Assembly: GCF_963853765.1 (NCBI RefSeq)
Contig: NC_088857.1
Location: forward strand, 48,670,001-48,734,000
Source of the DNA: Magallana gigas
Taxonomy: Eukaryota
Length of the DNA stretch: 64,000 bases
Direction: 5' to 3'
The position numbers and the translations under genes were made by a program. The notes under the pieces are model-generated. The model made no database searches and had not been told where the DNA came from. It was given only the letters and a program-made list of their open reading frames with translations. Below, piece after piece: positions 16,434 to 33,400 of this stretch (within the stretch, counting starts at the first letter, position 1; each line of letters starts with the position of its first letter).

Positions 16434-19400
16434 GGATACCAAAGAGAGCAACCGAGCGGGAATGTAAACAACGAAAACGAAACCACCGAATGTAACTCTC
16501 TCACATCTTCAGACACTTCCTATGCGAGGATTGTTTCTATCAATGTTTGCGGTCTAGCTTCTAAGCTCCGAAATCCTGAGTTTGTTGATGTTATTAGCAA
16601 ATATGATATAATCTGCCTCACAGAGACAAAAACAGATAAAGCTGACAATATTGATATCCCAAATTTCAGTGTATTCAGCAAACATAGATCAAATCTGTCA
16701 TTTCGAAAGTCTGGTGGTATTGTAGTCTATATTAGAGATTCTTTATCCAAATTCTGTAGCATAATTAATAACGCAAGTGACAATATATTATGGATTAGAA
16801 TAGAAGGTAAAACATTTAGTATTAAGAAACATATTTTGATGGGAACTGTTTATATACCGCCATCAAACTCCAGATTTTCATCAGTTGAAATTTTTGACGA
16901 TATTGAGAATGAGATTTTTAACTTGTCCAAAGAAAATGATTGTATATGTTTATTAGGTGACTTTAATAGTAGAGTATCCACATTGAAAGATTTTATTGAT
17001 GTTGATGATTCTCTATCACATTTTTGTAACAGTGTTGACAATAACAGTAATTTTGATTGGGCTGTTGATCAAATAGACCTAGAAGCAATTGAAAAATATG
17101 GTTTTTCCATAGAAAGGAAATCTAAAGATAACACTGTTAACTGCTATGGAAAAAAACTTATTGATATCTGTAAACATTGTAACATTATAATACTTAATGG
17201 TAGATCCATGGGTGACCAAAATGGTGAGTTTACATGTAAACAATCAAGTGTCGTAGATTATTGTATTTCAAACACTGAGTTTTTAAGAAATGTACACAAT
17301 GTGAGAATATTACCTTTTTCCTCATTTTTATCTGATGTTCATAACCCTATAGAGATAGTATTGGCACTTGAAAGACAGCACAGCACTGAATCCATATATC
17401 AACAAAAGCCAACACAAGAAATTGCTAAACAATGGAATCCCGAAAAAGTTGAAGTATATCATAACTATATAGAAGATAAAGTAGATATTGTAAAATCATT
17501 AGAAAATGAACTAAGTAACACTATGCTTGAAAACATATCACTAGAATTTATTGATAATATTGTTGAAAAGATTAGTGATGTACTGGTCGAAAGTGCCAAA
17601 AATGTATTCGGTAGAAAGCCAGTTCTTACAAATACAAGTGAAACATTCAATGTCAAATATAAGAAACCATGGTTTACTCGGGACTGTAAGAATGCTCGAC
17701 AGAATTATAGAAAAGCGAAAAGGTTGTACAAAAAATTTGGTGGAGATATTTTTAAAAGTGACTTGTATGAAAAAGAAAAATTGTATAAAAAAAGGTTGAA
17801 AAATGCAAATGTAACGCATAGAGTAGAAATGAAAAAAAAACTTTTTAGTTTAAGAACAAATAATCCTAGAGAATATTGGAAAATTTTGAATACAAACACA
17901 GATAAGAAAAGATGTAATGCAAATTTATATGATCTTTTTACTTTTTATCAGGATTGTTGTAACAAGAACTATAATGAACAAGAAGATTCAAATAACAATG
18001 TATTTTCTCTTGATGAACTTAATATGTTATCTGATATTAATCTTAATAATGACATTAACCAACCAATAACTTGTGAAGAAATATTTAAGGGTATCAATAT
18101 GTTGAAAAATAACAAAGCTTGTGGTGATGATAGAATTTTTAATGAATATATCAAAAGTACCCAAGATTGTATGTTGAATTTATATACTGTATTGTTTAAC
18201 AAAATATTTGATTCTGGTGTTATACCCACACAGTGGGTTAGTGGTAACATTATACCTGTTTATAAGAATAAAGGGGATAGTACAGAACCCCAAAATTATA
18301 GACCAATTACACTCTTGAGCTGTCTTGGAAAATTATTCACTGCTATCATTAATGAAAGGTTAAACAAATATGCTGACAATGTTCAACTCATTTTAGAGAA
18401 CCAAGCAGGTTTTCGTAGAGGTCATAGTACAATAGATCATATTTTTTCATTGTATTCTCTTATCGAACTCTTCAAATTGCATAAGATGAAATTATATTGT
18501 GCGTTTATAGATTCTGAGAAAGCATTTGACTCTGTTTGGCACATTGGTTTATGGAACAAGGTATTATCAAACAATATTGATGGAAAATGTTTTAGAATTA
18601 TTACTAATATGTACAAAGGTATTAAGTCAAAAGTTCTGGTTAATGGATTAAGTTCAGAATTTTTTGAATGTACAGTTGGAGTACGACAAGGGGAAAATTT
18701 ATCGCCTTTTTTATTTTCACTATATTTAAATGATCTTGAGGAGTATCTTTATACAAACAATGTCAGAGGTTTGTCACGCTTGTCTGATAACATTAAGAAA
18801 GATCTTAATATTTATTTAAACCTTTTTGTCTTATTGTATGCAGATGATACCATCTTATTGTCAGAAAATCCAGAAGATTTTCAACACTTACTCAATGTTT
18901 TTTCTAGATATTGTAAAGAGTGGCGTCTTAAGGTTAACAGTAAAAAAACTAAAGTTGTAATGTTTGGTAGAGGTAAACAAACCAACTGTTTTACTTTTGA
19001 AGGTTCCCAATTAGAAATTGTTAACAACTTTAAATACCTGGGTGTTACTTTTTGTAAAAGCAACTCTTTTAATCTTAATGTTAAAGAACTGTTTGATAAA
19101 GCTACTAAAGCAATGTATGGTGTTATTGGGAAGTGCAGAACACATAATCTAACAATTGATTGTAAAGTAGACATGTTCGATAAAATTATCAAACCAATAT
19201 TATTATATGGATGCGAAGTTTGGGGTTTTCATAACACTAATCTCCTTGAAAAATTACATTTAAAATTTTGTAAACATATATTGAACTTGAGAACCTCAAC
19301 TCCAAACTTTATGGTATATGGGGAACTTGGAAGATACCCCTTAACAATTAATGTTAAAGTTAGAATGATTTCCTTCTGGGGTAAATTAGTCAATTTCCAG

Positions 19401-20003
19401 AACTCAAAATTGTCAGCAAAACTTTTTAATGTATTGAAGAATTTTAATAACCCATGGTGCGAAGCCATTAAGAAAACTTTAAATCAATGTGGATTGACAT
19501 ATATATGGTATCAAAACACAATAAACATACCCTGGTTAAAATCTAAAGTATACAATATTTTATTAGACCAATTTAAGCAATCATGGTATAGTGAGGTACA
19601 TAATTCTCCAAAAGGTTTAAATTATAGGATTTTTAAAAACTCACTGGATTTTGAAAAGTATTTATTGATTTTGCCAACACAATTATGTAAGAAATATTGT
19701 AACTTTAGAACTGGTAATGCTAAATTACCTATTGAGATAGGTAGATGGTTTAATATTCCTAGAGAAAACAGAATTTGTAAACTATGTACCTGCAATGAAA
19801 TTGGGGATGAATTTCACTACCTTTTCAAATGTACTGATGTATATATATCCAATTCAAGGGTTAGATGTTTACCAAAATATTTCATAACAAATCCAAATGT
19901 TGTAAAATTTGAAAAACTGTTTAATATCACAAACATAAACCAACTTACCAATATTTGTAAACTATTAGATACTATATTTGAGAGAGTTAACTCTCTTGGT
20001 TAA
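16434..20003 (+). CDS. Endonuclease-reverse transcriptase polyprotein; open stop-to-stop for 1190 codons
   Basis: The frame extends upstream of the tracked ORF without stops to 16434. APE motifs SINVCG, CLTET, GTVYIPP, GDFNSR, VVDY, SDVH. RT motifs YRPITLL, QAGFR, KAFDSV, GVRQG, LFSLYLNDL, YADD, YLG. C-terminal CxxC-x9-H-x4-C. Confidence 0.92.
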   Translation, partial: GYQREQPSGNVNNENETTECNSLTSSDTSYARIVSINVCGLASKLRNPEFVDVISKYDIICLTETKTDKADNIDIPNFSVFSKHRSNLSFRKSGGIVVYIRDSLSKFCSIINNASDNILWIRIEGKTFSIKKHILMGTVYIPPSNSRFSSVEIFDDIENEIFNLSKENDCICLLGDFNSRVSTLKDFIDVDDSLSHFCNSVDNNSNFDWAVDQIDLEAIEKYGFSIERKSKDNTVNCYGKKLIDICKHCNIIILNGRSMGDQNGEFTCKQSSVVDYCISNTEFLRNVHNVRILPFSSFLSDVHNPIEIVLALERQHSTESIYQQKPTQEIAKQWNPEKVEVYHNYIEDKVDIVKSLENELSNTMLENISLEFIDNIVEKISDVLVESAKNVFGRKPVLTNTSETFNVKYKKPWFTRDCKNARQNYRKAKRLYKKFGGDIFKSDLYEKEKLYKKRLKNANVTHRVEMKKKLFSLRTNNPREYWKILNTNTDKKRCNANLYDLFTFYQDCCNKNYNEQEDSNNNVFSLDELNMLSDINLNNDINQPITCEEIFKGINMLKNNKACGDDRIFNEYIKSTQDCMLNLYTVLFNKIFDSGVIPTQWVSGNIIPVYKNKGDSTEPQNYRPITLLSCLGKLFTAIINERLNKYADNVQLILENQAGFRRGHSTIDHIFSLYSLIELFKLHKMKLYCAFIDSEKAFDSVWHIGLWNKVLSNNIDGKCFRIITNMYKGIKSKVLVNGLSSEFFECTVGVRQGENLSPFLFSLYLNDLEEYLYTNNVRGLSRLSDNIKKDLNIYLNLFVLLYADDTILLSENPEDFQHLLNVFSRYCKEWRLKVNSKKTKVVMFGRGKQTNCFTFEGSQLEIVNNFKYLGVTFCKSNSFNLNVKELFDKATKAMYGVIGKCRTHNLTIDCKVDMFDKIIKPILLYGCEVWGFHNTNLLEKLHLKFCKHILNLRTSTPNFMVYGELGRYPLTINVKVRMISFWGKLVNFQNSKLSAKLFNVLKNFNNPWCEAIKKTLNQCGLTYIWYQNTINIPWLKSKVYNILLDQFKQSWYSEVHNSPKGLNYRIFKNSLDFEKYLLILPTQLCKKYCNFRTGNAKLPIEIGRWFNIPRENRICKLCTCNEIGDEFHYLFKCTDVYISNSRVRCLPKYFITNPNVVKFEKLFNITNINQLTNICKLLDTIFERVNSLG

Positions 20004-20157: not shown

Positions 20158-20825
20158 AATACCTCCAAATATAACCAATGTAATTAGATACACATATCTA
20201 TTGTGACAGGCCGCGATTCCTTTAATAAGGAACTACTTAAATTATTTAGTGACCGAAATGTCCGTACGATTCAAGTTCTAAAGTAAACACAAATAATCCT
20301 TTTGAGGCATTACACATAGATCCAGGCGTTCTTGATGAATCAAACGATAGCGATGAAAGAATTTTGACTTCCGTTATATAGCATAATGAAATGCTCTTGT
20401 AGAAAATTCTGTATTCCTGAAGAGAGACAAGTATTAAGAAGGTGAGACTGATTATTTGTAAAATATACGTACAGTGGTGTTTATTGTATATACTGTCAAT
20501 AATTTAGATTTGGATATGCATTTCACGCTGTCAGACTTTTTAATGCATATTTGTTGGATATCGGTAATCAATATGACGAATATTTATTTCAAATAATTTT
20601 TTGTCATTGAATATTCATTTGTTTATTTTGAATATGACATCGATGTTTTTTTATCACTCCATCTTTTGTATACTAGTGTATATATAATTAATTAATTATA
20701 TAACTTTGGATGCGAGGTAAATACTCAACTTTACGGTATACAATATACATGTAACTTGAATTATTTCTGATTTTTGCTTAGAGAAACTACACGTTCTGTA
20801 CTAACAATATACAGAAAATAGGGAC

Positions 20826-23800
20826 ATGTCTGCAAGGATCTTATTTTACTGCCATCTATTTGTCGTCTCGAACGGAATCAAAGATACTCAGTCGCAACAG
20901 GTAAATGACGTCATTGACACCCCCGCGTTTTTGACCGGAGATGTCATCATTGGAGGTCTTTTCCACATCTTTAACACCAAACAGCCCGATCGATGTGACC
21001 TGGATTTGGACATGTACTCTTTGATGGAGATGGAAGCAGTTAAATGGTCTCTGATGCGACTGAATGAGGTTAACTTCATCCCTGGGGTTCGATTAGGTAA
21101 CACCGGGGCTTACGATTCTTTTGAAACTAAACTTAAAAATTCTTGCGTTTTCATTATAGGAATACATGTACAGAATACATTTTACATGTATATAAGATAG
21201 TCCACGTTTTCATTTGTGTATCTGATAAGAATTTATATTGGTTTAAGGCAGTAGACTTCAATATCAAATTTTAAAAGCATGGACTTGTAACCAATTTGTT
21301 GGAATGCATGGCGTCATAGTACATTATTATTAAAGCTTGTTGTTATTCTAAGGCCTTTAAATATATGCATTCTGTCAGTGATATATTAAAACCTAGTTAC
21401 CACTCACCTTATATATAGACTATATAACTGGTTTAATGCACTAGGTCCGTTTCCTCTCACGGCATTCTTTGCTCAACATACTTTTTTTGTAATGCAGGAC
21501 TTCTGGCTTACCCGACATGCGGAATACCTAGCATTGCTGCTCTGCAAAGCAACAAGTTTCTCCAGCTTTTACGAGAACATAGAGCGTCAAATAAAACCAA
21601 CAAACCGGTCTATATTAAAGGTACACATGCTTCCTCCATCAAAAAAGTATATACCTACATGTATATATTGATAAAAATATAGATTAAATTGTAAATCGAT
21701 AATGCTTTGCCAATTCTTCTGATCGGTAAAAGATTGTCGTTTGGTTTCTTCAGCTGTACTAGGTCCAACCTTTAGCTCCGAGTCTGCAGTTGTATCCCGG
21801 ATACTGAGCAGTGTCCCTGACGACTACAAGCTCCTACAAGTCTCCTACTCCTCCACGGCCGCGTTCCTGACCAATGAAACGAATGCCGAAACATTCCTCA
21901 ACTTCTTCCGGACGATACCATCCGACAAAATCCAAACGCAGGTCCATGTCCTTTCTTGTTCATCATACACGAGACTTATGATTTTAAGTTTGCTATAAAC
22001 GGAATGTGTGCAAAATTATCATATTTAACGTATCTTTATAGGACTGCGTCATAAATTATCATTCATGTAATTCGTAAAGAATGTTCGTTTGACAATGAAT
22101 CTCTACATAGAGAAAATGGTTGATTTAAGTCGTAAAGCCTATAATTATGATACTTTGTGATAATTTTTTTTGTGATTTTCAGACTATGTTGGATTTGCTG
22201 GTTGACCTGGGTTGGACGTATATTGGATTAATTCACTCGGGTGACGCGTACGGTAATGACGCAGCCCGTGAACTGAGTGACGCCCTGGCAGAGAGACGCA
22301 TTTGTATCGCAGCTGTTTATCAATGTGACAGTGACATTTCAAGGGCCCGTTTCCATGAAATTCTGTACAATATAACTGCACTGAGAATCAAGGGCATCGT
22401 TTTTATCGGAGCTGTTTCAATGGTTCGCTCTTTCATTGATAGCATTGAACGTATTTCATTTTCTCAATACTCTGTTCCCTCTATCATTTTTTCGGAGAGC
22501 CTAGGCTTGCAGTCTGAGATTTTCTTTAATTCCGAATCGAAGGAAATCTACCCGGCGGCAAAAGGATCATTTGCCATGTCGCCCCCTCACAAAGAAATGT
22601 CCGAATTTTCGGAGTACTGGAATACAATGTTTGCTAATATGAGCAAGAACCAAGATGATACGCAAATAAACCCTTGGTTGCAACAATTCATGAAATTACA
22701 ATTGGGATACAACAAATTGAATGTTGACAATCTGTTAACGAAATACCCATCGTCGACGTTTGTTAAATATGCCATAATGGCGACTTACAGTGTTGCCAAA
22801 ACAATCAAGGACGTACATCAGAAGGTTTGCCGTGGGATCAGTGGATTATGCTCAGAAATGAAGGAAAATAGATTATCTGAGTATATAGAGCAAGCCAGAC
22901 GAACTACTGTGGATTTTGAGAAAGATTTTCCACAGAAAGCTAAGCTTAGAAATCTTACCGAAAGGGTTTCTTTCACTAAAGAAGGTGATATTCAATTTCA
23001 AAACTCCGGGTTGATGTACGAAGTTTACAACTACCAGAGCCCATCAAACGACACAAACTTTGAGTTTGTTAATGTAGGTACTAATTTATGTAAAATGACT
23101 TGATATTACTCCCATTAGGGTAAAACGCGTTCATTAAAATGTTTGATTCAAGCTCGAAATACTAGAACATAGGGCATAATTATATATGTCTGAATTGATT
23201 AAAAAAACATGAATTTGCAACTGATTTCCTTCCAATATTTAGGTAGGTTCTCTGAAAAAGCCAGAAACACCGGCAGAAGGCGGGAAACCAAAATTTACTT
23301 TACTGAAACCAAGGGTAAAATTCTACGACAACATGGGTAGGATCACCAATACAGTCAAATCAATTTGTCAACCGAACACGACTTGCACGATATGTCTTCA
23401 AAACCACGAGTCCGAGACATATCTGTATGACCCCGGTGACGTCATTGTGGTCGTCACGTTCCCCATTCACAATCGAGGAAGTGAGCCCTTACACTGTGGT
23501 CCAGTTAGGCGAAGGATTGGTCTCGATGTCGCACTAGGGGCAAAGTTTGCAATCGACAAGATAAACGAAAACAGTGATATTTTTCCAAACAAAAAAGTTG
23601 GTCTTCTGCTCCTGGACACCTGTGATGATCCATTGATAACTTCCGATATTATTCTAGAGCTCCAGCTACACGGGCAGATTAACAATCGCATACCTAATAT
23701 TTCCGACAAGATTTTAGGGTATGCTGGTGGATTTTCTAGTAGTCCAACTTTACAGGTGGCGGACATCACAACAGAATTGAAAACTGTTCAGGTTTGTGTT

Positions 23801-26592
23801 TACGATTTGATTGAAAGAAAAAAATAATTACAAAGCTCATTTTCTTCATTTTTGTATCTTATAGAAATAAGTTTTCCCGAATAATCACAGTACAATGGAA
23901 AAAGTGAAAATACTAAAGTTTAATTAAAATATTTTTTTCCTTTTCTTTTCTTTTTTCTTTTTTTTTTGGGGGGGGGGGGGATTCACATACGTATAAAAAT
24001 TAAACGCGTCATTCTTTAAATTTGACACAGGTTAGCTGTTGTGCTACGTCTGACTTGCTCAGCGACCGTTTGAACTACCCGTATTATCTAGGCTTGGCGA
24101 CTCCATTGAACTACACAACTCGAGTCATGCTCCAAATGGTGAACAAACTGGGCTCCAACAACATCCAAGTACTGTTTAGTGATGGGAAGTATGGCGAATC
24201 TGCGGTGAAACTGATTTTGAGCTTGGCTCCTAGTTTCAATATCTGTGTTGCGCAGACTGTTCGAGTTTATGGGAGTGATGTTAGTAATGATATAAGCAGT
24301 GTAGTGGCAAGTCTACACAGATTCCCTGGCGCCCGGCAAGTACTCGTTTACATTGCTTCACCACTGATGCCAAAAGTCGCAAGAGCGATCAACAGTATAA
24401 ATGAACATCGTCGATTTCTATTCATCGGGGAAAATTGTTTTTACCACAGAGACTATATGTTGAAATATCCGAATCTGCACGGATCCCTTATCGTCGCAGA
24501 ACAACCTATTCCCCAAAGTGACGAGTATAAAACATATCTTAGAAAGTTCGATCCGGCGTCTGTAGAATTGCCTACAAGTCTGCTTTATTTCATGCAAGAA
24601 AACTTGAACTGTTACTACGAATTTAGCTTTAGAAAAGAATTCCCCCAAAAATGTAACCGTGAATTACTACGTAAATTTCCTGAACATTTAGACAAGTGGA
24701 CACCATATTTGATAAAGTCAATAACAGCGTTGATTAAGGGTGCTTACCAAGCCTTAAAGAGTATGTGCAAAGATGAAACTATTTGTTCGGAGTATAGGAA
24801 TTCTCCTGAACACGTGGTAGAATTCGTGAGAAATGTGACTTTGGACATCGATGGCGATGACCGGGATGATCAGTTGTTTGACTCGAACGGAAATGGCGTC
24901 CTTGGGCTCAAAATATACATCATAGAAGAAAAAGACTTTGTTGAGGCATGTTGCTTGAAAAATATAATAAATGATAAAGGAGGATCACATGATACCATCA
25001 GACAAAGTCCTTATTGTAAAAATCGCAATGCATTTAGCGATTTTCCTCTCAAAACTTTTTTCAAATTGTTTACTTGTTCTAGCAAAAGGATATTTACGTT
25101 ACTCTTAAAAATAAAATAATTATAAAACAATGCAACTGTAGCGCCGTTCGAATCACTGAAGTTGTTCAACTTTTCAGATTGGACATTGGCATCATGGCGA
25201 TGCTGAGCCATATTTCGAAAGAAAAAGAATCCAAGTATATCCTTCTAACTCTTCTTGTGGCGATGTATCAGTGACGTCATCGACGCACAGGTATAATCAT
25301 TCATATCGGTTCGTTACGCTAACATCCTGCAACGTTTTGGTTTTCTTTACTTAATATATATTTTCTCAGTGTAAAGATTCTACATGTTCGAGCATACACT
25401 ATGTGGACAGCAATTTCACGATCAAAATAGTATGACCCTAACGCATTATATAACCCATGACATAACATAATTAATTGTGTATGATGTCGAATTTTTTTTA
25501 TTATTATTCAAAGTGCCCTAAATTCTGGTGTTTGATATAAACCATAGATGTTTACCTGGTTCATTCCATTTTTCTAATTTTAAGTGAGACTGAGGCGGAC
25601 ACATCAGGAATAGTTAAACTCGTCAAAACAGTTCTCTTGTCCGTCTTTGCTGGAGCAATCGTTATCCTTTTGTTGGCGTTCCTCTGCATATGGCGGAGTA
25701 AGTTACTAGTACATCAATACAAGCAACAATATTAAAGTAGCCATAGCGTAGTATCTGATATTGTGATTTAATAAATGGTTGGCATTCAATCATTGAATGT
25801 TACTTTTTTTTTTATTTAGGACAAACATACATAATGTCTTCTATGTCTTCGGATACATCGACGAAATCAGAATACAACTCCATTGACGATTTCAGCATCA
25901 TCAACATGAAGCGAATTAATTCGGAAATTTCACTAAGACTTGGCGATTTCTTTCGTAGCGACTCGCCTTGCGGAACACCCAAGTCCACACGGTCTACTGG
26001 AGATATCAGGGAGAACAGCAACCAAGTGAGGAATGAAAGAGTAAAGAATTCGCCGTCAGTCCCCCCGCGGAGGAATATGCCGGGCCTGCCCACGCACTTG
26101 TCAACTCACATACCTCGACACCCCAGGCTAAGAAGCGAACCTGTGATAAAACTGTCCTTTTCACCGAATACTGCACGACGTCTAAACTCGGAACCATTTC
26201 CCAAAATGCATAGAGGACGCGCCGATTCCATAGGAATGCCATACATCCTAGCGCCAAAATCCAGACGTTTACAATCAGAGCCTAACTTACCTTCGCCAAA
26301 TTTCAACAGACTGTTGTTCAATAATGCAATCAGAAGGGAGAGTGTACAGGACAACGGTTACATCTTCCCAATACACGAACCTCGGGACCAGCAACAGACA
26401 GAAACTATGGAAATAGCTGATAGCGTACAAGAGACAGAAGTAGGTATATTCACACAACAGACAGATATAGCTGATAGAGCACGCCAGATAGAAGAAGATG
26501 ATGCCACACAACAGGGGGGAGAAGCCTGTGGAGGGCCAGTCCATTTTGTGTTGGGGAATCCCAGAGACAAATTGCATGGTTACTCCTGCTAG
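20826..26592 (+). CDS. Class C GPCR (mGluR-like)-derived protein: signal peptide, two Venus-flytrap (ANF-receptor-like) domains, one TM helix, ~257-aa cytoplasmic tail; ~1311 aa, 9 exons
   Basis: Exons 20826-21096, 21498-21620, 21754-21941, 22183-23073, 23243-23791, 24031-24945 (GC donor), 25178-25290, 25585-25697, 25820-26592; total 3936 nt, all phases compatible. VFT1 motifs GDVIIGGLF, GPTFSSES, QVSYSST, FFRTIPSD, LGWTYIG, AYG. VFT2 motifs GDVIVVVTFPIH, LLLDTC, GGFSSSPT, QVSCCATSDLLSD, KYG. TM segment VLLSVFAGAIVILLLAFLCIW. Confidence 0.82.
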
Positions 26593-27883
26593 AACTATCA
26601 CCGTTAGAAAAATATACCATAGTACATGTACTTACATGTATCAGTAAAATATTAATAAGAACATTTGTGTTAGTTAAGAACGTACACGGGTGGTAAAATT
26701 CAAGAAAAAGTTTAGGGAATGTAGTATCCGAGAACTAGAGACCAACCAGAAAGACTTACAGGGTATTGTACATGTACTACTATTTCTTTCGACATGGTTT
26801 GAACTTCCGTTTCTGTGCCTGCATTCTTTCTTTATTAGAAAACTATGAGTATAGCAATAAATGCAGAAAAAATTTACATCTCCTGATTCTCCTTCGCCGC
26901 ATTTGAATTTTTTCTGCAATGCCCGCAACAGATATTTATACCCGTAGGAATCACCCCAAAAAACATTTTATCATTGAAATGAATCACTCTTAACCTTTGA
27001 AAAGAGCATAGGACTTCACAGATTTGAAGACGTGACCATGCAAGTTAAAACCCTGTGATTGCTATTTATTGTACTGTGTAGATGTGACCTATGCAGTTAA
27101 TCAGTACTGTTTTTCTTGATTAATAGGGATAGCCTACTGGTACTTAGTTACTAGTATCAGTCATTTATATATAGTGTAAAATAATATGTTTGTAAAACTA
27201 ATTTAAAATTAAAGTTTCAATAAAGCAATCGAGAAATTCTAGATGCCTTTTTTTTTTGTAAAGGATGAAATGATCTCAGTGAACATTAATACATGTACAA
27301 CATAAACATGATACAAAATTGTACATAGCATTGAACACTTGATTTTTATGTAAATTTATGTGAAAAAATCAAATAATTTTGATGCATTTATAAAATTTTG
27401 GAACATGGCGTTACTGATAATATTTTGTGTGAAAATCCACAGAATTACATGTTGATGGTTCATGTAATGCCCTATACATTGATTCACATTGACAATACTC
27501 AAATAAACAAAGTAAAAAATAAATAGATGTAAATGGTCAACTCTTGCTGTCATGATAGTCACAAATGAGCCATCACACTGAGCAACTTTATCTATGACCA
27601 ATATGGTTGCATAGACTATCATGGTCTTACATGTACAAGAAATATTTCATTTGCTGTAATATTTGAAACAATTTTTTATTCATTATTAAACAATCTTAAA
27701 CAGTTTCCCAAAACAAACAAACAAACAGGTATAATAAAATACAGATATGTGAAAAACAGCCCCTGTCATAAAACCAGTATGTCAATAAATTTCTAAAAAT
27801 CACACCAGCTGCATACGACAGTTGTTCCTTCTTGTAGCATAATCTATAACAGTACCTGAGTATTCATAAGTTTTAACAAGTTT

Positions 27884-30112
27884 TCATTTAAAAGGGTATT
27901 TAGAGTGCCACCATGGAAACACTTTTAGATTAACAACACGGTCTAAGAAAATCACAGTATCACCAACAACGTCCCTGTTTTGATTGGTCGACTCTTTCAT
28001 TGATGTGTCAAAATGAAGGCGGAGACAGTAGAAACGACTTTCCTGGCTGACCTTCAAATAAACATTGCACAATACTAATCCCATCACTGATAAAAAGCTC
28101 TGATAATTTTGACAAGTCACTTGTAATACATAGCAGTCGATTTCATCGTGTCCATACACATCACAGTAACCGTCATACAGATTCACTCGACCCGGTAGAG
28201 CCATCAGCGTTGTCAGTTTGTTAATATGAGAAAGTCGCTCTTTCTTCAACTTAAAGCTAAAGTTCCAGACATTTTTAAAGGGTTCAGTCCATGTAAACAG
28301 ACACCTGTTTCCTTTTAAATGGTAGGGCTCATTTTCAAATGGCAAATTGGTTGTTGTTCTTGAAATAAATAGAGGGTAAGACCAGAAGAGAGCCCGGACC
28401 ACTCTGTATCTAAGTCCTTGGGCTCGCTCCAGGCATTCTATCTGCAGCTCAACAGGCAGGTGCGTATTATTAGCACAAAACCTTTAAAAATATATGTTTA
28501 TCATTTATTAAATAACTTTCCATATTATATATTCAAAAGATTACAAGTTAATCAAACTAACTTATTAAAGGCCAATGCTATAGATCTATAGAATAGTTTT
28601 TTGTTTTTTTAAATACATGTAGGTCCAGTCACATTGACAATTTATCAATCCTATCTCCCTGAATAAACAGGTAGATAAGTAAACAATACTTTTCCTATTA
28701 CCATCTGATATCTACATTTATATATACAGAATACCAAATTAGCGGGTAAACAAACAATGGAAGATAACTTAATTGCTCAAATTTTGTAAGAAAGGAAAAA
28801 AAACAATAAAATATTTCTACCAAATTTTGAATTCCAACCTTTTTTAAGCAGATGAAATTAAAGTGATTGGCTCAACTATATTCCCCATAAATTAATCACT
28901 TTCTGATAGAATATACAAATAAATTATTTTAATTCTGAATACCTTGTATAAAGGTTTTTCCAAAACTGCCTCGTCCTGGTCACTAGATACGAATCTTTAC
29001 ACAAGGTTGCGAAGTTCCTCACAGCCTCAGGGTCAATGTAGGCAGCCAGAGTGAACCAGATGTCAACAGGGTAAACATGTCTCCCTACGTTCTCCTCTTT
29101 TTCTTTGCATTTCTTTCGGGGTCTTAAAGCTTTTGTTTCAGTTTCTATAGAAAAATAAATAACAAGTATGTACAGCATGTTTCACTAAGAGACTTTTATC
29201 CATACAACATTATAATTATCAGCTATACACACTACATTAGGCCCACTCTACATTCATCAATTTTTTATCATATTTGCAAAATACATTTTCTCATTCAACC
29301 AAAATGATAATTTAACCATAAAATTTCCAAAGCATTATTCTTTTGTACAAACATCATGCTTAAATCATATTAAAATCTTACTGGTTGTATCATCTTCATC
29401 CGAGTTCCCCTCACCCACATCATCTAACACATCAAAATCCTCCAAATCTTTCTCAAACCAGCTGAGATCACTATTGTCTGTGTTCATGTCTTTTCTTTGA
29501 TCTGATAAAAGAGAGCATGGTAGGGAATTTTTTGAAAATTCTTCTTTAAATCTGCATGTATTTCAACATCTGTTGTCTTGTCACAAATGATACATGATAA
29601 AAAATATAACTTGATATTTGAAACAATATATCACAAGTATGCCATGATTTAAAAAATAACATTTGAATCTTACATTTAATGTTTGTAGCTATTGATGAAA
29701 TGGCTTTCTTCACTCTAACAGAGCCAGAGGTTTGTGTCTTAGATGAGTCTGCATAATCACACAAAGTCACATCTGAAATAATTAAACAACAAACTCTATT
29801 TTTGTTTTATGCTAAAAGGTGATGGCTTTAAAAATGTATTGCTTAATTTATAATTCTAGATTTCCTTAGTTAATATCGTTATTTCATAAAACATCATCTG
29901 ATGATAAAATCATCAAGGCCTTGATCGAGATCAGTACAGTGTTGTTATTGAATGTTTGCAGTCATGTAGCACTATAACATTTAGTTACATCTACAGACTT
30001 AGCAATATTATAAAAAGTTCAAACCATTCTGTATCCCTGGATCCTTTGATATAACACATTGGTTATTCCTTACTTTGTTTTTTCTGTGTTTATTTCGAAA
30101 TTTTTTTCTCAT
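27884..30112 (-). CDS. TMEM183: Transmembrane protein 183 homologue, ~368 aa, 5 exons
   Basis: Exons 30112-30025, 29772-29674, 29501-29382, 29144-28943, 28481-27884 (1107 nt, in frame). Recognised family motifs VTLCDYADS...RVKKA, YPVDIWFTLAAYIDPE, FWKNLY, LQVTCQNY, WWHSKYPF. Confidence 0.9.
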
Positions 30113-30406: not shown

Positions 30407-33400
30407 ATGGCACATCAAACAATCTTTGAAGATCCTAGCGAAGAATTTGTGGACTGTACTGATGAATTTCTCGATAAAGTCATCGAAGAATGCTTAGCAG
30501 TTCCATCTGATGATCATTTTTCCGACGCAGGTGAGAATATTAGTTCTACGGACGTCAAAGGAAACGATAATGTTAATCTTAATCAAAATGACCAAGCAGA
30601 CAGCCAGTCGTCATTTGTTGGTCCTGCTCTTATTCCGAGAGAAAAGTCGGGACATTACATTCCCCTTTGCTCACACATAGATGACGACAGCTTTGATTTC
30701 GATGAAAATATTTCAGTTATTCGGCGATCGCAAAGTGACGACTTTCTTTCAACAAGCAGATCAGCCAGTAAAGATGACCATCGTGAATTGCAAAGGCCAA
30801 CCCTTAGCGAGAAAAACATCAACGAATTAATTCGTCCTCCTAATAAATCTTTAAACGACACTATGCAGTCAACCTTTTCAAACCCTTCAAGTGGAATGAC
30901 CAATGGTACGGGCAGTTCTGCTAGAAGTAGTTCATGCAATATAGACTTCTTGGCAGAGTTTGAGCGAAGGGTCGATCTTTTGGAATACACTGATTATGCT
31001 TTGGAAGAAGTATTTGTCATGTTAAGAAGTTGCGTGGAAAAACTTTGTGTGAATAACGGTATCGTTTTCGAAAATCAAACAGAAAGCCTTAAAACGTGTG
31101 AAACAGATGGCTCTGCATGTGAAGAAAGCACGACGGAAATCACTGAACACGACAAGGAAGCGGAAGTTTCAGCAAACACGGAAGCAAGCGTTTCTGCAGA
31201 CAAGGAAGCCGACGTTTCTGATACAGAAGGAACCGAGAAAAATCATGGGGGAGATAAAGATAAACTTATGGAAAATGAAACCAAATTAGCAGAAGAAAGT
31301 GATACCCAAGACAATAGGGGATATCTTCAAGATCTTTTGGGGTTGCTAGTGGAACTAGAAAAACGGTTCGAACATTTCACAGCTGAAATTGGAGGTAAAG
31401 TGCAAATAAAAGTTCCATGAAATATATGAAATACAACATGTCGTACTTGAATTTTAAATGTTATTGTGTTATTTTTATTGATAGACCTTGTTCAGCTTGG
31501 AGCTTTGTCTGCCAAACATGCTGCGAGGATTGAACAATACGCCAGGTGTGTTCAAAATACGTATTTGAGTATGAAGGCCGACAATGAGAAAATGCAGGTA
31601 GGATCAAGCGAAAATGTACAAAAGTGTTCAATATGCCGTACAAACCAAATAGTAAATAATAAACAGTCACTATACGCTACATGGTAGATTTACTGTGTGA
31701 ATATTTATAATTGTTCGTTTTAAAATAAAGGTGGTTCCTATTGATCTCTAAGAAATAAAATATACTGAATCCATATTTCAGGACTACCTACAAATCAAGG
31801 AGACCGATTGGGTGCAGACACAAGCTCAACTACATAATGAAATAGTACGTCAAACAGAAGAAATCCAGGCGCTGATGACTGAACTGTCTAAGAGTAACAT
31901 GAAAAACCGGATCCGTAACAACAGTATGTTCTGAAATGTGTTATTAAATTCATATTGGACGCATAAACTAATTTTAAGAATTATTATGGAATTTAATGCA
32001 TATCAAATTATGGAAAAGGTTTCATTGTTGAATAAGCCATTATTTCATCTAAATCTTAGTTTATCAGATCTAAACACTTCACCTCCATATAAGTATGCTG
32101 TAAGAGTATATGACGCAGTTTAGCCAATTATTGTTGAGGAAAATAATACATGTATGTAGAAATCGGTGCACATAACAGAAACACCACACGCCTGGTAACT
32201 GAAAAAGTTTTTGCTTTGGTGATGAGTATCATTATGATCGTCAGTGAAAGAATAAAATGCTTTGCCTCAATTGACAGCTGCTGCTTGATCATCTAATTTT
32301 ATAGTTTCAGTTACGGACATGTTGGTTGGGACCATGGTTCTATATATCCTCCGTGTAAATTGATAGCCGTTCACTGCAAAATGCAAGAACTATGTTTGTT
32401 CAATTTTGGCGAATTCCAGGAATTCATCTACTTATTCGTTTCAGTGCAAGATCGACATCTCAATCTGGTCAGGAAAGACTCGCACTCCACAGAGGATATC
32501 GTCACCCTCATGCTTCATCAGAGATGTTCCATTGAAAAAGCAATGGCGCTCGATTTCAGTCGCCAGTCCAAAGTAAAAATATCTGTCTCTCTTTCGCTTT
32601 CTCTCTCTCTCTCTTACTTAATTTGAAGGATTTATAGATATCTATATACATTTCAGATCAACGAATTGAAATTGCTGGTCCTTCAACAACAGAGCTACAT
32701 TCAAAAGCTGGAACTACAGAATAAAGAGATGGACATGGTTTTACAGGGTCTGCTGTTTCCGGCGGATGAGGTTAGATGTATTCTTGTGAATAATCAGATG
32801 AAAATAAGATTTATTTGGCATTTGGGCATTATCACACATCACAATTGTACAGAGTATTATGAATAATTCTCCTAGAGGGATAAGTAGTATACTGTGTGGA
32901 TTAACAGATTGCAATTTTTTTTTTATTTTGGAATAAAAAAAAAATAAAGACGCCATTTTGAGACTGTTAACTATGAGAGAGCTTGCGACAGATTAATGTA
33001 AACTGTGTAAAGTGTGAGATTTATATCATTTAAGCATTCGTTTAAGTTACAGTATATTTAAGGGATGTCATAACCAAGCTATAATGAATGAAGTAGCAGT
33101 ACTAGTAGTATTCATAAAAGATTACAATAATGCAACAAACGTGCGTGTTACATGTTTATATATTAAAAAATATATGTATCAAACAAAATCAATTCAAATA
33201 TCTGAATATTGATTTATTATTAAGTTCAAAATGAACATTTTTAGCCTAAAGAGCCGCCAAAGGAGTACGAGAACATATGTCCGTTGAGTGATCCCATCAG
33301 TATGGTGTCTGACGTCCTGTGTTGTGACCAAGCCCTCTACGTCATCGATAAATCCACCGACTGCTCTCTGGTGTCCGAGCAAATATTCCAGATAGGTATT

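What the first reader, a model, noticed from the sequence alone, without database searches (positions are those of the whole stretch)
20826..26592. Double Venus-flytrap, single-pass receptor: a class C GPCR ectodomain pair without the GPCR
Seen: a phase-consistent 9-exon model gives signal peptide, VFT1, short SxC..CxxC linker, VFT2, ~45-aa stalk, one 21-aa hydrophobic helix followed by WRR, and a long polar tail ending at a stop. There is no nine-Cys domain (only SSC survives after VFT2) and no 7TM exons in the ~1.3 kb before the convergent TMEM183. Both VFTs keep residues matching the amino-acid-binding signature of mGluR/CaSR/T1R (S in GPTFSS / GGFSSS, T in YSST / CCAT, Y in AYG / KYG, acidic residue in SES / GEN). 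Established: class C GPCRs signal through VFT-CRD-7TM, and single-pass VFT receptors such as natriuretic-peptide receptors have one VFT and usually kinase-like/cyclase domains. Inference: exon replacement converted a tandem-VFT class C receptor into a G-protein-independent amino-acid sensor, co-receptor or decoy. I do not know of a described family with this architecture.
Basis: partly seen in the sequence, partly recalled or inferred. Interest (0 to 1): 0.85.

Follow-up and report, generated by a model that had tools for sequence, protein, structure and literature searches.

The report
Single-pass receptor with two flytrap domains
This oyster gene is real, spliced and expressed, and it encodes a membrane protein with two glutamate-receptor-type ligand-binding "flytrap" domains, one membrane helix and a docking-motif tail; it belongs to a conserved mollusc and brachiopod family that nobody seems to have studied.

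Summary
Nine coding exons (20826-26592) plus an upstream 5'UTR exon give a 1311-aa protein. It has a signal-like N-terminus, VFT1, a tri-Cys linker, VFT2, a ~40-aa stalk, one TM helix followed by WRR, and a 257-aa polar tail.

- **Transcript:** spliced RNA contigs from three studies carry all eight coding junctions, including a GC-AG intron. Other contigs run across the stop codon.
- **Domains:** Pfam finds ANF_receptor twice and no NCD3G or 7tm_3. The nearest 7tm_3 match on the chromosome is 29 Mb away.
- **Selection:** pN/pS among transcript variants is about 0.15. Ostrea and Saccostrea orthologues keep the TM helix and the tail motifs.

This is not a local oddity. Dozens of 50%-identity clusters from bivalves, gastropods and the brachiopod Lingula share the architecture, and every one I looked up is labelled "uncharacterized" or "hypothetical". 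Their VFT1 and VFT2 are sister to units of five-VFT class C GPCRs of bivalves.

The whole clade uses a short tri-Cys linker, so a nine-Cys domain was never lost at this locus. VFT2 of this gene has lost two of the five amino-acid-contact residues.

The likely function is G-protein-independent sensing of an amino-acid-like ligand. Output would go through a family-wide Y-[IL]-x-P tail motif and three RxxSxP sites. This function is inferred, not shown. The scan also noted a tandem-VFT class C GPCR elsewhere in this genome (s1-382481).

The parts
20256..20441 (+). 5'UTR exon (start approximate), spliced to 20782
   Evidence: A 184-nt loose end in the X14 contig lies before 20780. Its last 24 nt match the window uniquely at 20416-20439. 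The donor is AG|GTGAGA at 20441/20442.
20782..21096 (+). First coding exon. CDS starts at ATG 20826. Encodes a signal-peptide-like N-terminus and the start of VFT1.
   Evidence: Contigs start at 20780-20782 and the junction 21096/21498 is present in X1 and X2. In-frame TAA at 20802-20804 lies upstream of the ATG.
21498..21620 (+). Coding exon 2 (VFT1)
   Evidence: Both junctions are present in X1 and X2 contigs; phase is consistent.
21754..21941 (+). Coding exon 3 (VFT1). Carries S139, T166 and D189 of the amino-acid signature.
   Evidence: Pfam ANF_receptor E 3.4e-5 for this exon alone. Junctions. Column analysis.
22183..23077 (+). Coding exon 4 (rest of VFT1). Carries Y217, C235 and E299.
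   Evidence: Pfam ANF_receptor E 1.6e-13, profile positions 110-351. The junction to 23247 is present in three runs.
23247..23791 (+). Coding exon 5. Contains the inter-VFT linker with tri-Cys motif C533-x5-C539-x2-C542 (23366-23395) and the N-terminal part of VFT2 (S657).
   Evidence: Pfam ANF_receptor profile positions 4-75. The three Cys are present in 38-41 of 41 family members.
24031..24945 (+). Coding exon 6 (rest of VFT2: T680, L700, Y728, C746, E808-N809). Ends at a GC donor.
   Evidence: Pfam ANF_receptor E 8.3e-12. The GC-AG intron 24946-25177 is spliced out in X1, X2 and X14 contigs.
25178..25290 (+). Coding exon 7. End of VFT2 (IGHW) and stalk with the single remaining Cys (C1006).
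   Evidence: Junctions. C1006 is the first Cys of the second tri-Cys motif, present in 40 of 41 relatives.
25585..25697 (+). Coding exon 8. Holds the transmembrane helix (about 25625-25693, aa 1031-1053) followed by WRR.
   Evidence: The only strong hydropathy peak lies here. The exon is present in X2 and X14 contigs, joined on both sides. The helix is conserved in orthologues.
25820..26592 (+). Coding exon 9. Cytoplasmic tail of 257 aa with RxxSEP at 26125-26142, 26179-26196 and 26266-26283, Y-I-F-P at 26359-26370, C-terminal YSC and stop at 26590-26592. The 3'UTR continues beyond.
   Evidence: Contigs cover the exon and cross the stop. Motifs are conserved in Ostrea and Saccostrea.

Best explanation
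What it is. An expressed, conserved gene for a type I membrane glycoprotein. The ectodomain is two class-C-GPCR-type Venus-flytrap modules in one chain, each followed by a short Cys-containing linker. Then come one TM helix and a disordered tail of short docking motifs. It belongs to an unstudied family found at least in molluscs and brachiopods.

How it most likely works (inferred):
- The membrane-distal VFT1 keeps all five alpha-amino-acid contact residues but lacks the glutamate-specific arginine. It would close on a free amino acid or a similar small molecule.
- The membrane-proximal VFT2 is the most conserved part of the protein, but its pocket is altered at two of the five positions. It would act mainly as a rigid transducer or second, different site, as in heterodimeric class C receptors or BvgS.
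- The resulting change in conformation or oligomeric state would pass through the single helix.
- It would be read out by phosphorylation-dependent docking on the tail, without a G protein. The candidate sites are the family-wide Y-[IL]-x-P site (an SH2-type ligand), three RxxSxP sites (14-3-3-type) and the conserved C-terminus.

Confidence. About 0.95 for the gene and architecture, and about 0.4 for the signalling mechanism. The overall figure is a blend of the two.
For: Shown:
- Exon model and single ORF. All junctions appear in spliced RNA contigs of three studies, and contigs run through the stop.
- ANF_receptor twice and nothing else. All 41 aligned family members scanned have ANF_receptor only, with no NCD3G, 7tm_3, kinase or cyclase.
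- No 7tm_3 match on this chromosome closer than 29 Mb.
- pN/pS 0.148 from 25 synonymous and 13 nonsynonymous transcript variants, none disabling.
- Ostrea edulis and Saccostrea orthologues are 58-60% identical in VFT1, 72-78% in VFT2 and 51-52% in the tail. The TM helix and tail motifs are conserved.
- Both VFTs match mGluR ectodomains best: PDB sequence E 1e-22 to 1e-27 and Foldseek E 1e-30 with TM-score up to 0.86 by target.
- The AlphaFold model of the Ostrea ectodomain has mean pLDDT 84 and pTM 0.77, with one long helix at the TM position.
- Signature columns: VFT1 has S139, T166, D189, Y217 and E299. VFT2 has S657, T680 and Y728 but L700 and N809.
- Y-[ILVM]-x-P occurs in 28 of 47 family tails against 2.9 expected from shuffled tails.
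- Three R..S.P motifs in the tail were reached in 6 of 5000 shuffles. There are 11 glycosylation sequons outside and none inside.

From the literature:
- A single-pass VFT receptor, VKR, can be activated by L-arginine (PMC2680970).
- BvgS has a mobile distal VFT1 and a closed proximal VFT2 (PMC4352136).
Against: - No ligand, partner, phosphorylation or tissue of expression was tested.
- The equivalence of pocket residues rests on sequence alignment and on my knowledge of mGluR1 and CaSR numbering, not on a solved structure.
- The short tail motifs are degenerate and could serve trafficking rather than signalling.
- VFT2's altered pocket could mean it binds nothing, or binds something else.
- I could not obtain the model's coordinates, so the relative arrangement of the two VFTs and the proposed VFT-to-linker disulfides (C235-C533, C746-C1006) are unverified.
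- The signal peptide is judged by eye only.
- The raw stranded reads were too few (18) to fix the strand independently.
Confidence: 0.6

Rival explanations
1. Ligand sink, clearance receptor or accessory subunit. The protein binds a small ligand or another receptor but does not signal itself. It would act like the natriuretic-peptide clearance receptor NPR-C, or as a partner of class C GPCRs.
For: It has no catalytic or G-protein-coupling domain. Class C VFTs normally work in pairs, from established knowledge. The weak GC donor of intron 6, together with a few raw reads inside that intron, could give a TM-less soluble form.
Against: A 257-aa tail is conserved between oyster genera at 51-52% identity, with several invariant motifs. 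The Y-[IL]-x-P motif is shared across the family. That is more than a pure sink needs. The three assembled transcripts all include the TM exon.
Confidence: 0.2
2. Adhesion or synaptic-organiser protein. The VFTs bind protein partners, as iGluR amino-terminal domains do, and the tail anchors scaffolds through its C-terminus.
For: Several family members end in PDZ-ligand-like C-termini such as ...ISRV. This orthologue group has an invariant ...YSC end. The VFT2 pocket is altered.
Against: VFT1, and both VFTs in most family members, keep the small-molecule alpha-amino-acid contact residues. That conservation is hard to explain without a small ligand.
Confidence: 0.13
3. Artefact or decay: a truncated or decaying class C GPCR copy, or a gene model whose real 3' exons (CRD and 7TM) lie elsewhere.
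For: Class C-type VFTs are usually attached to 7TM domains. A retrotransposon ORF lies just upstream.
Against: Spliced contigs run from exon 6 through 7, 8 and 9 and across the stop. There is no 7tm_3 within 29 Mb. pN/pS is 0.15 and no disabling variants were listed. Orthologues and dozens of relatives share the architecture.
Confidence: 0.02
4. One reading: recent exon replacement turned a tandem-VFT class C GPCR into this gene.
For: Tandem-VFT proteins with a 7tm_3 domain exist: five VFTs in bivalves, two and three in amphioxus. In the tree their first unit groups with the family's VFT1 (SH-aLRT 99), and units 2-4 are sister to the family's VFT2.
Against: The single-pass form is shared by bivalves, gastropods and Lingula, so any conversion is ancient. 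The tree is unrooted with respect to architecture. Unit 5 of the GPCRs groups apart, which fits equally well with an ectodomain array having been fused onto a GPCR. The GPCR relatives have no NCD3G either.
Confidence: 0.05

Closest known systems
Class C GPCRs (mGluR, CaSR, GPRC6A, T1R)
   Same: Both VFTs belong to the same sequence and fold family: ANF_receptor, with best PDB matches to mGluR8/7/4 and TM-score up to 0.86 by target. The alpha-amino-acid contact residues are kept in VFT1. The lobe-2 'IC' cysteine and a following linker cysteine are conserved.
   Different: There are two VFTs in one chain. There is no nine-Cys NCD3G domain and no 7tm_3. It has one TM helix and a motif-rich tail. 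There is no cysteine in the loop that forms the intermolecular disulfide in mGluR and CaSR (read from the sequence, compared from my knowledge).
Multi-VFT class C GPCRs in databases: five VFTs plus 7TM in bivalves (e.g. Argopecten XP_069135753.1), two or three VFTs plus 7TM in Branchiostoma (XP_035696128.1, XP_035691717.1)
   Same: These are the closest relatives by tree. They show the same order, a VFT1-type unit followed by VFT2-type units, the same short tri-Cys linkers, and no NCD3G.
   Different: They end in a 7tm_3 domain and have three to five units. They too appear uncharacterised.
Natriuretic peptide clearance receptor NPR-C and receptor guanylyl cyclases
   Same: ANF_receptor ectodomain, single TM and, in NPR-C, a non-catalytic tail (established knowledge).
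   Different: They have one VFT, a peptide ligand bound across a dimer, and no amino-acid signature. Sequence matches here go to mGluRs, not NPRs. There is no kinase-homology or cyclase domain.
Venus kinase receptors (VKR) of invertebrates
   Same: Single-pass receptor with a VFT that keeps alpha-amino-acid binding residues. One member is activated by L-arginine (PMC2680970).
   Different: VKR has one GABA-B-like VFT and an intracellular tyrosine kinase. This protein has two VFTs and no kinase.
Tandem-VFT sensors outside animals: BvgS/EvgS histidine kinases and Trypanosoma receptor adenylate cyclases
   Same: Two VFTs in tandem, one TM, and signal passed to the cytoplasm. In BvgS the distal VFT1 is mobile and the proximal VFT2 is closed (PMC4352136). 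The T. brucei cyclases have two VFTs and a single TM (PMC6027212).
   Different: These are an analogy of architecture, not family membership, because no sequence relationship was found here. They carry enzymatic output domains.

Membership tests
Class C (family 3) GPCR | Extracellular ANF_receptor-type Venus-flytrap domain | tested here: met
   Pfam PF01094 in exons 3-4 and 5-6. mGluR ectodomains are the best PDB matches by sequence and by fold.
Class C (family 3) GPCR | Nine-cysteine domain (NCD3G, PF07562) between VFT and membrane | tested here: not met
   No hit at E<=1 in any exon, at E<=10 in the linker segments, or in 41 relatives. Only C1006 remains after VFT2.
Class C (family 3) GPCR | Seven-transmembrane domain 7tm_3 (PF00003) | tested here: not met
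   There is one hydropathy peak only and no Pfam hit. Transcripts end in the tail exon. The nearest genomic 7tm_3 match on this chromosome is at 19.69 Mb, against 48.67-48.73 Mb for the window.
Receptor guanylyl cyclase / natriuretic peptide receptor family | ANF_receptor ectodomain and a single TM helix | tested here: met
Receptor guanylyl cyclase / natriuretic peptide receptor family | Intracellular kinase-homology and guanylate cyclase domains (or NPR-C type short tail), and closest sequence kinship to NPR ectodomains | tested here: not met
   There is no Pfam domain in the 256-aa tail exon. The 60 best PDB sequence matches shown for each VFT are all class C receptors (mGluR, T1R, CaSR), none an NPR.
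Venus kinase receptor (VKR) | Intracellular tyrosine kinase domain | tested here: not met
   No kinase domain in the window protein or in 41 relatives.
Unnamed two-VFT single-pass family (e.g. Ostrea edulis LOC125647262, Lingula anatina LOC106158345) | Two ANF_receptor units in VFT1-type then VFT2-type order | tested here: met
   Unit-specific HMMs score 444 bits (v1) on aa 35-493 and 421 bits (v2) on aa 557-989. In the tree, VFT1 and VFT2 fall inside the respective family clades.
Unnamed two-VFT single-pass family | Tri-Cys linker C-x(4-7)-C-x-x-C after each VFT | tested here: inconclusive
   Present after VFT1 (C533, C539, C542). After VFT2 only the first Cys (C1006) remains, in this gene and in its oyster orthologues.
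Unnamed two-VFT single-pass family | Single C-terminal TM helix followed by basic residues, and a cytoplasmic Y-[ILVM]-x-P motif | tested here: met
   TM at about aa 1031-1053 followed by WRR. Y1235-I-F-P is present here, and the motif occurs in 28 of 47 family tails against 2.9 expected.

The most novel reading that the evidence does not exclude
A previously undescribed lophotrochozoan receptor class. Two class-C-type flytraps in one chain would replace the obligatory receptor dimer of class C GPCRs and transmit amino-acid binding across a single helix. The output would be phosphotyrosine (Y-[IL]-x-P) and phosphoserine (RxxSxP) docking sites. This would be a G-protein-independent way of sensing amino acids in animals, and the sister or source of multi-flytrap GPCRs.
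Probability: 0.3. Interest if true: 0.8.

Novelty: new variant of a known kind. Interest (0 to 1): 0.62.

Why it matters
Class C flytrap domains are the best understood small-molecule sensors of animal cell surfaces. They are thought to work as pairs that twist a pair of 7TM domains. A conserved family with both flytraps in one chain, and a single helix with docking motifs in place of the 7TM domain, would show that the same sensor can drive a different output.

It would also offer a natural "single-chain dimer" for studying flytrap coupling. And it would give bivalves, gastropods and brachiopods a candidate receptor class for dissolved amino acids, which are known feeding and settlement cues (my background knowledge, not tested here).

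The related five-flytrap GPCRs are an unexplored extension of class C architecture.

Tried and rejected
- **Complex prediction.** VFT1 against VFT2 of the Ostrea orthologue, as two chains, scored 0.01 and gave no verdict. This is neither support nor evidence against.
- **Model coordinates.** They were not available to scripts. The inter-VFT geometry and Cys-Cys distances could not be measured. Only pTM 0.77 hints at a fixed arrangement.
- **Vestigial NCD3G.** Relaxed Pfam scans (E up to 10) of the linker and stalk segments found nothing meaningful.
- **Tail exon against the own genome.** It matched only itself, so there is no paralogous tail.
- **Word-indexed protein searches.** These returned few family members because only 8000 candidates were scored. 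The exhaustive representative search was the informative one.
- **Literature.** Six searches, including the orthologues' gene identifiers, found no description of the family. The library lacks most subscription journals, so this is not proof of absence.
- **Raw stranded reads.** Only 18 were laid, too few to settle strand or transcript ends.
- **dN/dS against orthologues.** Not attempted, because protein divergence of 28-42% suggests saturated synonymous sites. Within-species pN/pS was used instead.
- **Pseudogene, mis-annotation or recent exon swap.** Rejected for the reasons given under the rival explanations.

Full report
**1. The observation**

The window is AT-rich animal DNA (GC 0.29-0.38). 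From the sequence I rebuilt the gene model in a script. It has nine coding exons: 20826-21096, 21498-21620, 21754-21941, 22183-23077, 23247-23791, 24031-24945, 25178-25290, 25585-25697 and 25820-26592.

These give one open frame of 1311 codons ending at TAG 26590-26592. Seven introns are GT-AG. Intron 6 (24946-25177) has a GC donor.

**2. Transcription**

Twenty public runs hold part of the stretch. About ten hold roughly half of its sampled words, as expected for spliced RNA of a locus that is 68% exon. I laid four runs on 20760-26759.

- Contigs of three different studies (X1, X2, X14) skip every one of the eight introns.
- The joint 24943/25176 carries a two-base ambiguity. That places it at 24945/25178, which is the GC-AG intron.
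- One X2 contig of 3825 nt runs from 20782 to 26440 through all junctions.
- An X1 contig covers 26353-26759, crosses the stop and runs beyond the laid stretch.
- No contig leaves exon 6, 7 or 8 for anything else.

A loose end of 184 nt before 20780 is a 5'UTR exon. Its last letters match uniquely at 20416-20439, and the donor is AG|GTGAGA at 20441/20442. An in-frame TAA at 20802-20804 makes 20826 the first in-frame ATG.

The raw poly-A reads were too few (18) to add more than weak strand information.

**3. Domains**

Pfam finds ANF_receptor in exon 3 (E 3.4e-5) and exon 4 (1.6e-13, profile 110-351). It finds it again in exon 5 (1.1e-5, profile 4-75) and exon 6 (8.3e-12). It finds nothing in exons 7-9, even at E<=1.

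A search of the whole 564-Mb assembly with the 7tm_3 profile gives 22 matches. The nearest on this chromosome is at 19.69 Mb, whereas the window lies at 48.67-48.73 Mb.

The ectodomain has 11 N-x-S/T sequons and the tail has none, which fits a type I topology. The signal peptide is judged by eye: a hydrophobic N-terminus here and in the orthologues.

**4. Selection**

Of the variants listed between the transcripts and the assembly, 38 fall in the CDS: 25 synonymous and 13 nonsynonymous, giving pN/pS 0.148. None is a stop or a frameshift, and one allele has an in-frame 3-nt deletion.

Orthologues are annotated as "uncharacterized protein" in Ostrea edulis (LOC125647262, 1274 aa), Saccostrea echinata (LOC133194835) and S. 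cucullata (LOC134242999). The Saccostrea models lack part of VFT2.

| Region | Identity to the window protein |
|---|---|
| VFT1 | 58-60% |
| VFT2 | 72-78% |
| Stalk and TM | 40-51% |
| Tail | 51-52% |

Invariant blocks in the tail include the three R-x-x-S-E-P/T sites, a DSPCGTPK block, NFN-x-LL, G-Y-I-x-P-I and the C-terminal Y-S-C. This is a working gene, not a decaying copy.

**5. It is a family**

An exhaustive HMMER search of 1.84 billion cluster representatives with exon 6 gave 137 hits at E<=1e-10. Dozens are 950-1470 aa long, match twice, and have the best match at about residues 640-970.

A hydropathy scan shows that these have one strong hydrophobic segment near the C-terminus. Forty-one of them, aligned (A1), have ANF_receptor (and the overlapping Peripla_BP_6) and no NCD3G, 7tm_3, kinase or cyclase.

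| Group | Genera |
|---|---|
| Bivalves | Solemya, Saccostrea, Ostrea, Dreissena, Potamilus, Sinanodonta, Pecten, Mercenaria, Mya |
| Gastropods | Haliotis, Nucella, Batillaria, Bulinus |
| Brachiopod | Lingula anatina LOC106158345 |

Nearly all names are "uncharacterized" or "hypothetical". The window's genome has at least three further loci that match the linker-plus-VFT2 exon and have no 7tm_3 match within megabases: C5:16.25 Mb, C7:34.69 Mb and C7:40.88 Mb.

The family consensus shows a C-x(4-7)-C-x-x-C motif after each VFT, then the TM helix, basic residues and a tail.

**6. Relatives with 7TM domains**

The same search found bivalve proteins of about 2800 aa with five ANF_receptor units and a 7tm_3 domain. 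It also found amphioxus proteins with two (1307 aa) or three (1846 aa) units and 7tm_3. None has NCD3G at E<=0.001, and they carry the same short Cys linkers.

I built a maximum-likelihood tree of 73 VFT units. It groups all family VFT1 units with the first unit of the five-VFT GPCRs (SH-aLRT 99). It places the family VFT2 units (support 91, with one long-branch intruder) as sister (82) to units 2-4 of those GPCRs (98). Unit 5 and the amphioxus units fall elsewhere.

So the VFT1-VFT2 tandem is older than the split between the single-pass and the multi-VFT GPCR forms. The tree cannot tell which output module came first.

That agrees with the hits at C3:26.53-26.55 Mb.

**7. Pockets**

Both VFTs match mGluR ectodomains best, by sequence (mGluR8/7/4, E 1e-22 to 1e-27) and by fold (Foldseek E about 1e-30, TM-score by target up to 0.86).

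I used the HMMER alignments and the known motif equivalences of mGluR1 (S165, T188, D208, Y236, D318) and CaSR (S147, S170, D190, Y218, E297). These equivalences come from my knowledge of those structures. The family columns read as follows.

| Position (mGluR1 numbering) | VFT1 here | VFT1 in family (of 41) | VFT2 here | VFT2 in family (of 41) |
|---|---|---|---|---|
| S165 | S139 | S 30 | S657 | S 38 |
| T188 | T166 | T 34 | T680 | T 26, S 10 |
| D208 | D189 | D 34 | L700 | D 26, E 3 |
| Y236 | Y217 | Y 33 | Y728 | Y 41 |
| D318 | E299 | E 26, D 9 | N809 (E808 next to it) | E 32, D 3 |

VFT2 of this orthologue group has a derived pocket, although it is the most conserved domain.

The arginine that holds glutamate's side-chain carboxylate (Arg78 of mGluR1) aligns with E in VFT1 and V in VFT2. 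[quoted passage not shown]

The lobe-2 "IC" cysteine (C235, C746) and the first linker cysteine (C533, C1006) are present in 40 or 41 of 41 members. In class C GPCRs the corresponding pair forms the VFT-to-CRD disulfide (my knowledge). I infer the same here but could not measure it.

**8. Structure**

AlphaFold2, run on alignment A1 with the Ostrea ectodomain plus TM (1075 aa), gave mean pLDDT 84 and pTM 0.77. It shows two complete alpha/beta flytraps, a beta-rich linker, and one long helix at 1023-1052.

A pTM this high for two equal-sized domains suggests a defined mutual arrangement. The two-chain complex test returned no verdict.

**9. Tail**

Y-[ILVM]-x-P occurs in 28 of 47 family tails, against 2.9 expected from shuffled tails. 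It is usually preceded by acidic residues (D-P-Y-I-T-P, D-D-Y-I-T-P and the like), and here it reads N-G-Y1235-I-F-P.

The window tail has three R-x-x-S-E-P sites; three or more R..S.P matches arose in 6 of 5000 shuffles. All three are conserved in the orthologues.

From general knowledge, pY-[IL]-x-P resembles ligands of PLC-gamma, Crk, Nck or Abl type SH2 domains, and R-x-x-pS-x-P resembles the mode-1 14-3-3 motif. I confirm the motifs but read the tyrosine as the family-wide Y-[IL]-x-P site.

**10. Mechanism and rivals**

The best-supported reading is a G-protein-independent sensor of an amino-acid-like ligand with motif-based output. The shown and inferred steps are marked in the explanation sections.

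Known analogies in architecture:
- VKR: a single-pass VFT receptor, one member activated by L-arginine (PMC2680970).
- NPR-C.
- BvgS: tandem VFTs, distal mobile and proximal closed (PMC4352136).
- Trypanosome adenylate cyclases: two VFTs and one TM (PMC6027212).

Rivals are a non-signalling sink or accessory subunit, and an adhesion or scaffold role. A pseudogene or mis-annotated GPCR is excluded for practical purposes.

**11. Novelty**

The proteins sit in public databases, but the family has no name. Six full-text searches, including the orthologues' gene identifiers, found no description. The library is incomplete, so this is provisional.

I file it as a new variant of a known kind: VFT receptors. 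The gene itself is an ordinary, if derived, member of a family-level novelty.

Noticed in passing
window 16836-20003 (+): An intact 1055-aa ORF with a reverse-transcriptase domain (RVT_1, E 4.5e-42) lies about 250 bases upstream of the gene's 5'UTR exon. It is likely a non-LTR retrotransposon.
   Followed up: partly
window 24946-25177 (intron 6): The intron has a GC-AG donor. Read-through of the donor stays in frame for 58 codons and would give a TM-less, possibly secreted two-VFT protein. A public gene model (P0001) reads it that way, and a few raw RNA reads lie inside the intron, but the three assembled transcripts splice it out.
   Followed up: partly
G000 C3:26.526-26.548 Mb (loci L007-L009); proteins P0003, P0011, P0013, P0043: There are class C GPCRs with five tandem flytrap domains and no NCD3G (about 2800 aa) in bivalves, apparently including this genome. 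Amphioxus has versions with two and three flytraps (P0090, P0049). All seem undescribed.
   Followed up: partly
window 25846 and 25444: One run carries an in-frame 3-nt deletion allele in the Ser-rich start of the tail. Another run carries a 10-nt insertion in a low-depth contig that lies inside intron 7 (unspliced RNA or DNA).
   Followed up: no
window 20256-20441 plus 20782-20825: The 5'UTR of about 230 nt holds several upstream ATGs with short ORFs, so translation may be regulated.
   Followed up: no
window 30407-31420 (+) and 27884-29178 (-): There is a 337-aa acidic, Ser-rich ORF on the + strand, and two minus-strand ORFs downstream of the gene.
   Followed up: partly
proteins P0092, P0121, P0122, P0136, P0140: A subgroup of the family (about 1320 aa) ends in E-[KR]-I-S-R-V, which looks like a class I PDZ ligand. 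The oyster group ends in an invariant Y-S-C.
   Followed up: no
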